64,000 nucleotides of DNA from Oikopleura dioica (GCA_907165135.1 OU015566.1:11656001-11720000); one strand, 5' to 3'; shown: positions 4,722 to 10,500, counted from the stretch's first letter. Notes: generated by a model not told the origin, from the letters alone. Made by a program: numbers and translations.

Positions 4722-5418
4722 TTCAGAATCAGATGGATTCTGACATGAATTTTCTTCAGAGTGAGAATTTTATAGAGCGCTTATACTACGGATAGGGGGC
4801 ACACTGGGTCACACCTTTGTCTCTTTGAGTGACAGCTCTGTAAAGGTCGATTACAGACCTGTTTTGGTGAGCTACTTATTTCCTATTTTGGACAAACAAA
4901 CACGAACTTAGGCTTCTGCGTCACATAATTTCCAAAACGGATACGATAATTACTGTCTACAGTTCTCGTTAAAGATTCAAGGTCGTGCCCGAAATTTCCA
5001 TACGGAAAATGCAAACCTTCAAAACACAAAACTACTCACAACCAAACTTGAACTCAACACCTATGCTTCGTCCCATTTTTATCTTGAAGAATAACAAAAA
5101 TGCTTTCATAGCTGGAACTTTGAGAACTGCGAGGTCTTTACTTTTATTGGGAAAGAATTTTTTCTTGTGTAGAAAGTTGGATCAGCTGAAATATGATCAA
5201 TACAAATCTGTAGCTTTGATGATTGAAGAATGAAGTTGTTGTCAAACAAGGATGAGTTAAAGAAAAAGGATTAAGAATAGAATCTTCACAATAAGGAGAG
5301 GTACATCCACGACGTAGAAAAAGTGCAAGAAGCACTTGTCTACCAGACAGAAATAAAAAATGTTTCTGGGGAGATAAAACGGATAAGAGGAGAGGGAGAA
5401 GGTCACATTGAATTCGCT

Positions 5419-7099
5419 TTAATTTCGCTTGGTTCGTGGGCGTCGCGATGCCGGACCTGCCGGCTTGGAGAATGCCTTAAATTTCCGTTATCAGGTGCTT
5501 TTGTCCGCTTTTTTTACTACATTTTCTTGATGAATGACCATTTTAAGCAAATTACCAAATTACTGCTACGAATAAAAATCATCACGTGGGCAAATTTTCT
5601 GTAGAAAGAAAACAACACCGATAAAGAGTAGTAAATAGCTACGGCGAGTACGCGCGATTTCATGAAATCACCATGAAAAGCTGTTAGTTAGCAAGGATGC
5701 TTGATGGATCATTTTGTTGTTGTATTTTTGGTACATTGTATGGTGATCTTTTACCAAGCTACTGCATTGTGCAACAAGGGCGTGATTTTTGATTTTCAGA
5801 ATCCTGGGAATTGTCTGATTCGGGGAGCTCTTTCTTGGCCTCCTAGAAAGTTAGACTACTGTTACAGTGTTAGACAATCCAAAATTAGATTGAGTTACAG
5901 TTACAGTTAGATGTTAATTTATACAAACTACAGATGCAATAAAACAATAAAAATAGACATAAAATACCTTTTTGACTTCAGTTTGCGGATGAAGATGCGA
6001 AATCAAAGCTTGCTGTGAGACCTCACTCGGTCCATCGATCTCGATCGAGAGAAGATTTTCAACTGGAATTCCGAAGTTGCCTAGCGCACTGACGAACGAA
6101 GCCTTGCAACTCGCGTAGAGCATCTTTTCCTAAATAGATCCTTCAAACTCGAATCACCTTTGGAATGTTTACCTTAATGGGCACCGTCACTTCAGAAGGA
6201 ATGGAGTAGACAAAGCAGTCTTTTTTATGGGACTTGCCATTATGCTCATATTTGAACTTGAAGAGATGATAGTTCGGCGAGGTCGTTGACACAGCGCCGG
6301 AGAACATGGTTGTCGAGCCCGCGAACTGGTCTGTCTGTTCAAGGCAAATATGCTCCTGCTTGACGTCAATCGCCAAGCGGACATAATCCACCTTTCCAGC
6401 GGCGAATTCCTTCAGCGCCGCTACCGCCTCCGAGGTCACTGGAAAACTAGAAGCTTTGATTGACTCACGCATTTTTATGCCGTTTCTTACGTAAGCCCAG
6501 CGACAGTTTCCTTCTTTGTTGTAACGGACGATGTTTCGAGGAGCTTGATCTCCGCTTTGATCTTTTCGGCTTCAGTTAATGGCCCATCTTCTTCATCGAG
6601 CTTCATTTGTTCTTGATGGCCCTTCCAAGTTAAATCGCTCGGCGAGTTGATGGTATACTCTCTCGAAATATATCCACCACCGAATGCTTGCTAGAACAGT
6701 TGTTTTCATGATGCTTTGAGGCGTTCGGAATACCTTGACTGTGGAAAGGGTTGAAGCATAAATCATCTTGTCCCTGACTGGAGCATTTTCAGAAATGTAT
6801 GAAAAGAGGATGAACTCGTAGCCAAGAGATGATTGAGAATCGAGGCGATAGAAAGCGTAGAAACACGGGTTGGATTCGGTGAGAGGAGCGAGTTGGCTAT
6901 CGAAGTCTTCCTGCCAGGTCTTTTTGGGCTTCAAGCATGCACCAGCTTTTAGACATTCATTTTCAATCACGATCTTAAAAAATTATACAAAATTGCAAAC
7001 TGAAAAAAATACCTGTAAGACGCGCAGATGACCTTGACGAGCATTGGTCATCTCATTTTTGATATCTTCTGAGACCTCGATTCCCGACCGATGTGACAT
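5419..7099 (-). CDS. TWF: Twinfilin (two ADF-H domains) with two candidate terminal exons (5759-5842 and 5419-5475)
   Basis: Starts MSHRSGI. Contains FILFSYISENAPVRDKMIYAST and FVYSIPSEVTVPIKEKMLYASCKA. The distal exon encodes AFSKPAGPASRR, the canonical twinfilin tail. Confidence 0.92.
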
Positions 7100-7555: not shown

Positions 7556-10500
7556 CTAGACCCACGGACTGGGCACCCATTGCGGCCTTTGAAGAAGTTG
7601 TTCAAATAAGTCGTAAATTTTACTAGCGGTCGTCTCCGTCGAATTGTTCGGAATGATGACATCGAATGCGTGCGAGTATTGCTGCATGATCGCGCGGCTG
7701 TCTTCGAAGATGTGAGGGTTGCCCTAGAAAATCGCGGTAAACAACAGGTGGGAGGATGATAGGAGGCAATAAGGTCAATAAGAGAGGTCGATAAGATGGA
7801 ATTTTTGTCACTAGAGGTCGAATTATAGATATAATGTAAGGAAACTCTTTTGAGTTATCAAACTTTAAATGTTACAAAAAAATTAGCCGGACTCCGCCGA
7901 AGCCCATAACCTGAGTCTTAGTTCTTTTTGTAAATGAATCAGTAGACTGAGAATTTCCTATTTTTCAGGTACATGCTTTATTTTCAATATGCGATTTTCA
8001 ATGTGCTGATGATTCTGTGAAAGTAAGTACTAATAAATATCAGATTTACCAAATAAAATGCAAAACACATATAGTCTATATGATATAGACAAGAATTTAC
8101 CTCGTATCCCATTGTTCGATCACCACCATTTCCAGGCGCAACATAAACAACTAGAGGCGCGTAAACCTTATTTTTAAGAAGTCTAAGTGCAGTGGGTTCA
8201 ACGTCGAGTATTGCACATTGTCCGTTATTGATGATGTCTCTAATAGTACTGAGTTTTGTGCCGTAAAGCTGACCTTCGTGCTCTCCATACTCGAGGAATT
8301 CGCCTTTTTGTATTGAGAGGTTCATTTCTGAGTAGTTCATGAAAAAGTATTCTTGGCCGTGTTGTTCCCCAGGTCTGGGCGGTCTCGTGGTAGTTGGGAC
8401 TAAATAAGGCATTCAGTAAGAAGTCAAGAAGCACAATTCTCTACCTGGATAAGAGTACTGCGTCTTATTCATGCCATTCATCGACATGAGCATATTTTTG
8501 ATATTTCTCCTTCCAACACCGTGAGCGCCGATGAGAACGAGGCATTTGCGCCGAAAATTTTGAACCTTTTTGACTTCTTCGTAACAGAGAGTTTGGTTTT
8601 GAGGCGTCTGGGCAACGGGATTGAAGCCTTGAGTCGGCGTGGTTCCCTTTTTCTTGCGCATTTGTTCAAGCAAATGCTCAGAGTTTGCTTTCCATTCGCG
8701 GAATTGCGGACTATAGAAAGAAATCAAGAGCCCGATGAAATCAACGAAGACTCACCTTGGCACAAGACCAGTATTATCCGTGTCCATATTTCTCGCTTGC
8801 CACCAAAAATCATCGTCTTTGCATGATATCATCAAGACCTTATGTCCAATTGTCAGTGATTATCAATAAATACTGAAGTAAGTACCTCTCCAGTACTAAA
8901 GCGAAGACCAGCTTCTTTGCAAGGAATGTCTGATGACTGCATTGGGTCGAAATCAAACAGCGCTCGAACATAAATTTCACAGGTTGGACTAGCGACAGTT
9001 TCTGATGGTTGGATTGTGAAAGTGATTGTTCCGCGAAGTGACCGGAGCATCATTTGAAGATCACCAATTTCCTAGAGAATTGGAATCAGAAAGTTTGAAG
9101 ATAGAAAAATCACCTTGTATCGAACTGAAATGCCATTGATATCGAAGATCTCATCTCCCACGTTCAATAAGTTCTGTCGATGAATCATTCCACCGATAAT
9201 AACCCTCGCCACAAGGCACTTTCCCTGATCCATCCGGAGAGTGATTCCAAGAGGCTCATCGTGGCCCTTGTTGAAAGATATCTTCTTTAGGCTACGCCCA
9301 CCAGGTTGTTGATGTTGGTTATGCTCTGCTGAGTTCGTTATATTCGCAACTTCAGCTGAACCTGCTGAGCACGTGGTCCCGCTGGAAGATGATTTTGAAA
9401 ATTGTCCGACAGAAGAGGACTGCGGAGGGGGATTTAATCTGAATGAATTTTCGGATTAATATCGCGCCATGAATAAAAATTGTTTGTCCAAATTGTTTAC
9501 GTAAGAGACTAAAATTCTTGTTTACTGTACATAAATACACACATGACTGCCCATCATTATATTGTCACTCAAATTGAAGCGTAGTACCTGAGATTCGGTT
9601 GCTGATAAATTTGTGATGAGATTAAGTCGTGGGCAATAAGTAGCTTGGGAAAGTGTGGATTGAGGAGGAGAGAGGCGAATTCAGGTCCTGGACCATCTCC
9701 TGGCGGGAGAAACTTGAGATAATCGTATACTTCGGCGAAACGCTGTTCTGCGCACGGACTCGAGACTTTTTTCGATGATAGATCAAGACTAAATTTATGA
9801 ACAGCGAGTTATCTAAATTCGTTTACCTAGAGATTCCGTCAAAAATATCAAGCCATTTCTGCAGACTGGGATCATCAAGTCCAGCAGGATCATTATTTCC
9901 AATTGCGTCTATTTCATCGAGACTATCAAGAACTTCTCCAACACCTGAATTAGGTAGAACAGTTTCTTGCTGTGGAGGAAGTCGACTAGCAAATGCATCA
10001 GAGACGGCTCCCTTTAGTCGGCGACGAGCGTTGAATTTTGACAAGTTTGTGATGGTTTGATTGAGATTCTTAGAGTTGCAGACGCGTTTACGGTCGGCGA
10101 TCCAGGGATGTTGAAGAGCCTCAGTTATAGTGATTCGTTCTTGAGGATCAACTGTCAACAAGCGAGTGACGAGATTCTTTGCAGATTCGGAAATGCCCGC
10201 CCAAACAGGGGAATTCATCGGCACATGTGCTACAGAATCATTTTTAAAATAAGAAGGATGGATAGAAAGAACCTTTTTGTATGTTCTGAATCAGCTTTGA
10301 ACCTGAACCAACGAATGGAAGCATTCCCGACAGTAATAGATGAAGCATGACGCCGCAGCTCCACATATCGACTTGCTTGCCGTACGCTTCGCCGAGCGAC
10401 ATTTCTGGTGCCATAAAGTGGGGTGTCGTCACTTCCCCTGCTTGTAATGTCTGTCCGTCTTTACATTCGATTGCCAGACCGAAGCGACCGAGTTTCACAG

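What the first reader, a model, noticed from the sequence alone, without database searches (positions are those of the whole stretch)
5419..5967. Twinfilin has two alternative last exons: canonical tail versus a CaaX (prenylation) tail
Seen: the phase-0 donor at 5967 (after ...HPQTEVKK) can join two acceptors in frame. The proximal exon 5759-5842 encodes EAKKELPESDNSQDSENQKSRPCCTMQ*, and the distal exon 5419-5475 encodes AFSKPAGPASRRPRTKRN*. Established: the distal peptide resembles the conserved twinfilin tail (F.KP.GP..R) that binds capping protein and phosphoinositides. CTMQ fits a farnesylation CaaX box, and an adjacent upstream Cys is often palmitoylated. Inference: splicing may switch this actin regulator between a capping-protein-binding form and a lipid-anchored form. 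I know of no prenylated twinfilin.
Basis: partly seen in the sequence, partly recalled or inferred. Interest (0 to 1): 0.8.

Follow-up and report, generated by a model that had tools for sequence, protein, structure and literature searches.

The report
Conserved CaaX cassette exon in twinfilin
The Oikopleura twinfilin gene carries a small optional exon, conserved in every related larvacean-like lineage examined, that swaps the protein's capping-protein-binding tail for one ending in a lipid-attachment (CaaX) signal, which would give a membrane-anchored form of this actin regulator not described in the papers searched.

Summary
On the minus strand, a five-exon, two-ADF-H twinfilin core (7099-5968) ends at a phase-0 donor. 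It can join 5842 (…KSRPCCTMQ*) or 5475 (AFSKPAGPASRRPRTKRN*). The distal form equals the annotated O. dioica protein CAG5107167.1, and two independent metatranscriptome contigs carry its junction.

The CaaX segment is best read as a stop-containing cassette exon (5842-5755), not a second last exon. A GT donor sits 4 nt after its stop, and no poly(A) signal follows before the distal exon.

No O. dioica RNA junction into it was found. The comparative evidence is strong:
- Three diverged O. dioica lineages keep the frame (84, 81 and 78 nt), both splice sites and …SRPCC[T/A]MQ*.
- Six further unnamed relatives have the same element at the same position, ending CCQIQ, CCVIQ (two species), CCTLQ, CCAIQ or CCGIQ. 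They form a 100%-supported clade with O. dioica.
- Spliced transcripts containing it exist in three of those species. Two of them also have canonical-tail transcripts.
- The motif occurs once in the 64 kb window, against 0.02 expected.

Prenylation is inferred from the invariant C-x-[M/I/L]-Q terminus. No paper found describes a prenylated twinfilin. The closest analogue is INF2-CAAX versus nonCAAX. The scan had not noted this before on other DNA.

The parts
5968..7099 (-). Twinfilin core: five coding exons (7099-7013, 6973-6734, 6690-6491, 6446-6173, 6129-5968), 321 aa, two ADF-H domains
   Evidence: Splice model and translation; Pfam Cofilin_ADF hits in exons 2, 4 and 5; exon 4/5 junction seen in contig X1; core plus distal tail equals CAG5107167.1
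5843..5967 (-). Intron A (125 nt), from donor AAAAAG|GTATTT to acceptor ctaactttctag|
   Evidence: only 57-62% identical between O. dioica lineages, with indels of arbitrary length
5755..5842 (-). CaaX cassette exon (88 nt): 27 codons EAKKELPESDNSQDSENQKSRPCCTMQ, TAG stop at 5761-5759, then CTTG before the donor
   Evidence: orthologous exons in 8 other lineages; 77-78% identical between lineages with length changes in multiples of 3
5762..5776 (-). CC-aaX codons TGT TGC ACA ATG CAG (C-C-T-M-Q). The CaaX box is CTMQ and the upstream Cys is a candidate palmitoylation site
   Evidence: Only occurrence of CC-x-[ILMV]-Q-stop in the window; C-C-x-[M/I/L]-Q-stop invariant in all 9 lineages
5476..5754 (-). 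Intron B (279 nt), from donor cttg|GTAAAAG to acceptor aaatttaag|. Contains blocks (5712-5698, 5691-5659, 5623-5604) that are nearly invariant between O. dioica lineages
   Evidence: no AATAAA or ATTAAA inside it
5419..5475 (-). Canonical tail exon coding part, AFSKPAGPASRRPRTKRN* (CPI-like tail). Becomes 3' UTR when the cassette is included
   Evidence: Junction 5968>5475 in contigs from two studies, X1 and X2; tail resembles those of other twinfilins; CPI-motif role from PMC6249002
5143..5418 (-). 3' UTR up to the first AATAAA (5148-5143)
   Evidence: Contigs X1 and X2 cover 5222-5470, and Bergen-type reads cover the conserved block 5200-5237; sequence

Best explanation
Window 5842-5755 (minus strand) is a conserved, alternatively spliced cassette exon of the twinfilin gene that carries its own stop codon. 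When it is skipped, exon 5 joins 5475 and the protein ends in the canonical basic tail, which in other twinfilins binds capping protein. When it is included, translation ends 27 codons later in ...KSRPCCTMQ, and the canonical tail exon becomes 3' UTR. The stop lies 4 nt from the last junction, so by the usual 50-55 nt rule the mRNA should not be an NMD target. The new C-terminus fits a farnesyltransferase-type CaaX box (Cys at -4, hydrophobic a2, X = Gln) with an adjacent Cys that could be palmitoylated. The included isoform would then be a membrane-anchored twinfilin lacking the capping-protein-binding tail. Shown: the exon anatomy, its conservation in 9 lineages, the canonical junction in O. 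dioica-type RNA, and inclusion and skipping in relatives' RNA. Inferred: inclusion in O. dioica itself, lipidation, membrane targeting and loss of capping-protein binding.
For: Anatomy.
O. dioica lineages: the Okinawa-type window, Bergen (L007, L008, L012) and a third lineage (L003, L013) keep the acceptor, a frame of 84/81/78 nt...SRPCC[T/A]MQ-stop and a G|GTAA donor 4 nt after the stop. The flanking introns are 57-68% identical with arbitrary indels.
Other lineages: six further genomic lineages have AG | short ORF ending CCQIQ, CCVIQ, CCTLQ, CCAIQ, CCGIQ or CCVIQ-stop | GT donor, between exon 5 and the canonical tail exon.
RNA in relatives: L001 (species B) and L011 (species D) are spliced exon 5 + cassette + tail exon. 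L010 (species C) is spliced exon 5 + cassette. P0024 is a full-length 338-aa CaaX isoform, and P0061 from the same species has an identical core with the canonical tail. P0009 is the canonical isoform of species B.
Clade: 100/100 support for grouping with O. dioica.
Chance: the motif occurs once in 64 kb against 0.02 expected.
Poly(A): no signal in the window's intron B.
Outside the clade: none of about 35 twinfilins retrieved has a CC-aaX tail.
Tail function: the canonical tail carries a CPI motif that binds capping protein (PMC6249002).
FTase acceptance of X = Q, as in yeast Ydj1 CASQ and LKB1 CKQQ, is my own knowledge.
Against: No O. dioica RNA record shows the 5968>5842 or 5755>5475 junction. 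The two near-identical metatranscriptome contigs carry only the skip form. All 9 O. dioica transcript-derived or annotated proteins retrieved are canonical. The JGI scan for the cassette core returned only genomic contigs. The three Bergen-type RNA reads over the exon are collinear with the genome across the acceptor, so they could be pre-mRNA. Contigs drop minor isoforms, and the raw-read runs came from a lineage too diverged to map junctions, so absence is weak evidence. L001 also retains two upstream introns, so it is not a clean mature mRNA. No lipid modification has been tested, and the NMD rule is not established for Oikopleura.
Confidence: 0.7

Rival explanations
1. The cassette is real and translated, but the CC-x-x-Q end is not prenylated. 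It could be S-acylated only, bind metal, sense redox state, or act as a C-terminal docking motif.
For: No lipidation test was possible. a1 varies (T, A, V, Q, G). Two adjacent Cys residues could by themselves be palmoylation sites. The upstream basic patch is weak and the linker is net acidic in several species.
Against: What is invariant across roughly 45-50% protein divergence is what CaaX recognition needs: Cys fixed at -4 from the stop, hydrophobic M/I/L at -2, and Gln at -1. Linker length and sequence vary freely (10-27 codons). A docking or metal site would not need to sit an exact distance from the terminus.
Confidence: 0.15
2. One reading: the CaaX segment is an alternative terminal exon with its own 3' end, rather than a cassette.
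For: In species C the one CaaX transcript (L010) runs on unspliced from the cassette through intron B, so the cassette donor is not always used. Bergen has an ATTAAA 16 nt into intron B.
Against: The window has no AATAAA or ATTAAA in intron B. A GT donor 2-17 nt after the stop is conserved in all 9 lineages. In species B and D the cassette is spliced on to the tail exon. L010 itself continues through the tail exon and its 3' UTR, so it does not end early.
Confidence: 0.08
3. The cassette works in relatives, but in O. dioica it is an unused relic, or its conservation reflects a non-coding role such as a splicing or structural RNA element.
For: No inclusion junction was found in any O. dioica-type RNA record. 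Intron B also holds nearly invariant non-coding blocks, and an invariant 7-bp complement to the cassette (AAAUCAC/GUGAUUU) is predicted.
Against: Three O. dioica lineages, whose flanking introns are largely unalignable, keep the open frame with indels only in multiples of 3, the stop at the same place, the CC-x-M-Q codons and both splice sites. A relic would decay at these divergences. Conserved flanking intron blocks are typical of regulated alternative exons.
Confidence: 0.06
4. The exon is a 'poison' exon whose only role is to lower twinfilin output through a premature stop, or it is a chance ORF in an intron.
For: It introduces a stop upstream of the normal one.
Against: The stop is 2-17 nt from the last junction, too close for EJC-type NMD. 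The peptide end, not merely a stop, is conserved. The motif is expected 0.02 times per window and recurs in 9 lineages.
Confidence: 0.01

Closest known systems
INF2-CAAX versus INF2-nonCAAX (mammalian formin splice isoforms)
   Same: An actin-dynamics regulator whose alternative C-terminal splicing gives either a CaaX-ended, membrane-bound form or a non-CaaX form, with different sites of action. [quoted passage not shown]
   Different: A different protein family (formin versus ADF-H protein). In twinfilin the switch also removes a defined interaction module, the capping-protein-binding tail. Here a stop-containing cassette does it, and no localisation data exist.
Canonical twinfilin (TWF1/TWF2, yeast Twf1, Drosophila twf)
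   Same: Two ADF-H domains plus a short basic tail. The window's skip isoform is an ordinary member, and its tail matches the F-x-K-P-x-G-P...R-R-P-R pattern of other twinfilins. The tail holds a CPI motif that binds capping protein (PMC6249002).
   Different: No described twinfilin isoform ends in a CaaX box. None of about 35 non-clade twinfilins retrieved has a CC-aaX tail. Mammalian TWF2a/b isoforms differ at the N-terminus (own knowledge).
CC-aaX proteins with tandem prenyl and palmitoyl anchors (RhoB CCKVL, paralemmin CCSIM; brain Cdc42 CCIF versus canonical CVLL by alternative last exon)
   Same: A cysteine directly before the CaaX cysteine. In those proteins it is palmitoylated after prenylation. 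In Cdc42 alternative splicing changes the lipidation type. All of this is my own knowledge and was not checked here.
   Different: Those are small GTPases or dedicated membrane proteins. X = Q predicts farnesyl rather than geranylgeranyl. Nothing was tested for twinfilin.

Membership tests
Twinfilin | Two tandem ADF-H (cofilin-like) domains | tested here: met
   Pfam PF00241 hits in exon 2 (7.4e-10), exon 4 (9.1e-10) and exon 5 (6.9e-4, below the curated cut-off); spliced model of 321 aa core
Twinfilin | Short basic C-terminal tail with a CPI-like motif (canonical isoform) | tested here: met
   AFSKPAGPASRRPRTKRN lines up with the tails of insect, annelid, vertebrate and fungal twinfilins; identical to annotated O. 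dioica twinfilin CAG5107167.1. Capping-protein binding itself was not tested.
CaaX farnesylation substrate | Cys exactly four residues from the C-terminus | tested here: met
   CTMQ-stop in the window; the same spacing in all 9 lineages
CaaX farnesylation substrate | a2 aliphatic or hydrophobic, and X among the FTase-preferred residues (S, M, A, Q, C) | tested here: met
   a2 = M, M, I, I, L, I, I, I and X = Q in every lineage. The preference rule is my own knowledge.
CaaX farnesylation substrate | Isoprenoid actually attached, followed by aaX cleavage and methylation | not testable with these tools
   Needs labelling, inhibitor or mass-spectrometry experiments
Alternatively spliced cassette exon | Own acceptor and donor, flanked by constitutive exons | tested here: met
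   ctttctag|G ... cttg|GTAAAAG in the window; AG and GT conserved in all lineages
Alternatively spliced cassette exon | RNA records with the exon both included and skipped | tested here: inconclusive
   Relatives: both forms in species B (L001/P0005 versus P0009) and species C (P0024 versus P0061), and inclusion in species D (L011, P0027). O. dioica: only skipping seen.
   No AATAAA or ATTAAA in window 5754-5476; relatives' transcripts continue into the distal exon
NMD-targeting poison exon | Premature stop more than about 50-55 nt upstream of the last exon junction | tested here: not met
   Stop to junction is 4 nt in the window and 2-17 nt elsewhere (corrected for species B and D with L001 and L011)
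Rab-type CCXXX double geranylgeranylation | Rab GTPase fold presented by REP to RabGGTase | tested here: not met
   The protein consists of ADF-H domains only. The REP requirement is my own knowledge.

The most novel reading that the evidence does not exclude
Appendicularians as a group make a farnesylated, and possibly also palmitoylated, membrane-anchored twinfilin. It has given up the capping-protein-binding tail, so barbed-end depolymerising and monomer-sequestering activity is placed at a membrane independently of capping protein. A regulated stop-containing cassette toggles the two forms. In at least one species (D) the lipid-anchored form may be the main transcript, since both assembled transcripts carry the cassette.
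Probability: 0.55. Interest if true: 0.72.

Novelty: new variant of a known kind. Interest (0 to 1): 0.62.

Why it matters
Twinfilin is a universal regulator of actin filament ends, and current models of its cellular action centre on its tail's interaction with capping protein. A natural isoform that replaces exactly that tail with a lipid anchor, maintained across a whole fast-evolving chordate clade, would be a ready-made separation-of-function variant. It asks what twinfilin's ADF-H domains do at a membrane without capping protein. It would add a second case, after INF2, of an actin regulator relocated by CaaX-toggling splicing. It also shows that current O. dioica annotations (CAG5107167.1, CBY21441.1, CBY36938.1) miss a conserved coding exon. 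Larvacean biology, with its specialised house-secreting epithelium and rapid morphogenesis, offers a tractable setting to test the isoform, but no link to any particular tissue has been shown.

Tried and rejected
1. Read laying. The 2026 raw-read runs of 'organism A' turned out to be the Bergen-type lineage, 90-95% identical in exon 4 and less elsewhere.
2. JGI scan for the cassette core. It returned only two genomic contigs and no spliced O. dioica transcript.
3. Word search with the 27-aa cassette peptide alone. The exon 5 + tail profile A3 replaced it and found genomic ORFs of more relatives, but no O. dioica inclusion fragment.
4. Exhaustive profile search. The 70-position profile gave only 25 hits, so it is a weak survey of twinfilin C-termini in general. 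Representatives at 50% identity can also hide isoforms.
5. Internal non-canonical (GA) donors inside the cassette that would keep the canonical tail in frame. I considered these because GA-AG introns were noted in this genome. I rejected them as weak matches, and the Bergen-type reads run collinear through the site.
6. Conserved RNA structure in intron B. All predicted pairs are invariant and none covaries, so the data say nothing either way.
7. Further possible exons at the conserved acceptor-like sites in intron B (ctaacag|cttttcatgg, ttctttctacag|aaaattt). The downstream reading frames are not conserved between lineages, so I did not pursue them.
8. Naming the relatives. They come from unlabelled metagenome and metatranscriptome assemblies. 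I can only say they form a clade with O. dioica.

Full report
**1. What is in the window**

The minus strand between 7099 and 5419 holds a compact gene. A script that joins the GT..AG-bounded exons 7099-7013, 6973-6734, 6690-6491, 6446-6173 and 6129-5968 gives an open 321-aa core ending ...HPQTEVKK, with introns of 39-44 nt. Pfam finds Cofilin_ADF in exons 2, 4 and 5, so there are two ADF-H domains.

The last core base is 5968 and the phase-0 donor GT is at 5967-5966. Two acceptors follow:
- ctaactttctag|G at 5842 opens EAKKELPESDNSQDSENQKSRPCCTMQ* (5842-5759).
- aaatttaag|G at 5475 opens AFSKPAGPASRRPRTKRN* (5475-5419).

The core plus the distal tail is letter-for-letter the annotated O. dioica protein CAG5107167.1 (OKI2018_I69 chr1 g3185). 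The first AATAAA is at 5148-5143.

Four bases after its TAG there is a good donor, cttg|GTAAAAG, so the exon ends at 5755. Intron B (5754-5476) contains no AATAAA or ATTAAA.

**2. RNA evidence on this sequence**

I had one run search and one read-laying run.
- Two marine metatranscriptome contigs from different studies (X1, 99% or more alike; X2, 95-99% alike) both skip 5476-5967. This is the canonical junction 5968>5475. X1 also shows the exon 4/5 junction.
- Neither contig contains the cassette. Contigs drop minor isoforms.
- The 2026 raw-read runs labelled with the species (X6, X9) come from a diverged lineage. Their differences and loose ends match the Bergen genome exactly (compare). Only exon 4, a 3' UTR block (5200-5237) and about 50 nt around 5814-5865 reached 90% likeness.
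- Three X9 reads lie on that last stretch. They are collinear with the genome across the acceptor and continue through the cassette. They show that RNA (or DNA carried over in the library) covers the exon, but they are unspliced at 5842/5843, so they do not show inclusion.

Direct support for the 5968>5842 junction in O. dioica is therefore absent. I could not test it properly.

**3. Relatives**

A word search with the exon 4 ORF returned P0005, from a relative about 51% identical. It is spliced at the exon 4/5 junction and ends ...ERRCCQIQ.
- Its contig L001 and the matching genomic contig L002 show exon 5 ...cacag|gtaaat, a 49-nt intron, and an exon NTESGEFVVKEAERRCCQIQ-TAA plus 23 nt ending gtagttg|gtaatg.
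- A roughly 410-nt intron follows, then ttttcag|PFAKPPGPARRPRTKPRA*.
- L001 joins exon 5 + cassette + tail exon, so the element is a stop-containing cassette.
- L001 also retains two upstream introns, so it is not a fully processed mRNA.
- The same cluster held P0009, a full-length canonical isoform.

Using P0009 as the query, and looking inside the clusters, gave the following:
- P0024 is a full-length 338-aa twinfilin ending ...KRPCCVIQ. P0061 is its canonical-tail partner, with an identical core (zero branch length).
- P0027 and P0064 are two transcripts of another species ending ...DSSCCTLQ.
- All O. dioica entries are canonical: CAG5107167.1, CBY21441.1, CBY36938.1 and six JGI/Logan transcript-derived proteins.

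Transcript-to-genome comparison shows:
- In species D (L011 versus L019), introns A and B are both removed around a 45-nt cassette.
- In species C (L010 versus L022), intron A is removed and intron B is retained.
- In Bergen O. dioica (L009 versus L007), the transcript is the skip form.

A profile search and the remaining contig look-ups added genomic loci. At the same place, every one has an AG acceptor, a short frame ending CC-x-[I/L/M]-Q-stop, and a GT donor 2-17 nt later:

| Lineage | Cassette peptide |
|---|---|
| Species C | DFEESQKDSKRPCCVIQ* |
| Species D | AQSKQDSSCCTLQ* |
| Species E | DFETTESKKARPCCAIQ* (TGA stop, read as W by the depositor's gene caller) |
| Species F | TRGSICCGIQ* |
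| Species G | DFEESKKDQKPCCVIQ* |

**4. Within O. dioica**

Bergen (L007, L008, L012) encodes EPKKENLESETQAESKKSRPCCAMQ*. A third lineage (L003, L013) encodes EPKKGEILESETQAESKKSRPCCAMQ*.

Against the window:
- The cassette is 77-78% identical. Exon 5 is 80-85%, intron A 57-62% and intron B 65-66%.
- Cassette lengths are 84, 81 and 78 nt, so net indels are multiples of three. Intron indels have arbitrary lengths.
- The stop, the 4-nt spacer and the G|GTAA donor are kept.

The middle of the peptide changes freely. The end ...K-S-R-P-C-C-x-M-Q does not.

**5. Chance and clade**

CC-x-[ILMV]-Q-stop occurs once on both strands of the 64 kb window, at 5776. The expectation is 0.02, or 0.005 with a flanking AG and GTA. 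Recurrence at the orthologous position in nine lineages rules out chance.

A maximum-likelihood tree of the cores puts all cassette-bearing sequences with O. dioica in a 100/100 clade on a long branch. Pairwise identity within the clade is 51-66% between species, against 31-38% to insect or vertebrate twinfilins. The relatives are unnamed, because they come from environmental assemblies. I call them larvacean-like on this basis only. Synteny supports orthology: a guanylate-kinase-domain gene lies upstream in the window, in Bergen and in species D.

**6. How it most likely works**

*Shown.* There are two mutually exclusive C-termini, decided by skipping or including a cassette with its own stop.

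*Established elsewhere.* The canonical tail carries a CPI motif that binds capping protein (PMC6249002).

*Inferred.*
- The included isoform loses that tail and gains a farnesylation-type CaaX box. What stays invariant is what CaaX recognition requires: Cys at -4, a hydrophobic a2 and X = Gln. FTase acceptance of X = Gln is my own knowledge.
- The adjacent Cys is a plausible palmitoylation site, by analogy with RhoB and paralemmin (own knowledge).
- The stop is too close to the last junction for EJC-type NMD. That is the mammalian rule and is untested in Oikopleura.
- The nearly invariant blocks in intron B look like the conserved flanking elements of regulated exons. A predicted 7-bp pairing between the cassette and one block shows no covariation, so it remains untested.

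**7. Comparison with what is known, and novelty**

Full-text searches for twinfilin with farnesyl or CaaX found no paper describing a prenylated twinfilin. The co-occurrences are mostly INF2 papers and proteomics lists.

INF2-CAAX versus nonCAAX is the nearest functional analogue.

Among about 35 non-clade twinfilins retrieved, none has a CC-aaX tail. One arthropod-like representative ends in CSIS after a normal tail, which is within chance. That survey is limited: it rests on a short profile, on representatives at 50% identity and on word-search reach.

I rate this a new variant of a known kind, namely CaaX-toggling splicing in a known protein family. The scan had not noted it before on other DNA.

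**8. Limits**

- Inclusion in O. dioica is inferred, not observed.
- Lipidation is inferred.
- The relatives' transcripts are assembled contigs from environmental RNA.
- The relatives are unnamed.

Noticed in passing
window 5712-5698, 5691-5659, 5623-5604 (minus strand, intron B): Three intronic blocks are nearly invariant between O. dioica lineages whose coding exons differ by 12-20%: ATGATCCATCAAGCA, CTAAC.AACAGCTTTTCATGGTGATTTCATGAA and TATCGGTGTTGTTTTCTTTC. The second contains a TTCATG...CATGAA inverted repeat and a branch-point-like CTAAC followed by CAG. They are likely splicing-regulatory elements for the cassette.
   Followed up: partly
window 5788-5782 and 5671-5665 (minus strand): RNAalifold pairs AAAUCAC, just upstream of the Cys codons, with GUGAUUU in the conserved intron block. 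That would loop out the cassette's 3' end and donor. All pairs are invariant in four sequences, so there is no covariation evidence either way.
   Followed up: partly
L010:1031-1540 versus L022:2027-2538: In species C, the only CaaX-isoform transcript retains the intron between the cassette and the tail exon, while the upstream intron is removed. The cassette donor is therefore not always used.
   Followed up: partly
P0027 and P0064 (L011); genomic L019-L021: In species D both assembled transcripts carry the cassette and no canonical-tail transcript was retrieved. The CaaX form might be the major isoform there.
   Followed up: no
P0089 (264 aa, arthropod-like twinfilin representative): It ends ...RGARRITKDEKSRHCSIS. 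That is a normal twinfilin tail followed by a C-terminal C-S-I-S, formally a CaaX box. It is one case in about 35, which is compatible with chance.
   Followed up: no
P0069 / L014:1144-1473: The depositor's gene call reads the cassette's TGA stop as Trp (…CCAIQW…). This is an artefact of the genetic code used for that metagenome, not a missing stop.
   Followed up: yes
window 7984-8727 (minus strand); L007:1-2574; L019:358-594: A guanylate-kinase-domain (MAGUK/CASK-like) gene lies directly upstream of twinfilin in the window, in Bergen O. dioica and in species D. In Bergen a Band3/HCO3-transporter gene lies downstream. The conserved synteny supports orthology of the loci.
   Followed up: partly
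window 5200-5237 (minus strand, 3' UTR): A 3' UTR block (cttcattcttcaatcatcaaagctacagatttgta) is conserved at 90% or more between Okinawa-type and Bergen-type O. dioica and is covered by reads in X6 and X9. It is more conserved than most of the coding sequence.
   Followed up: no
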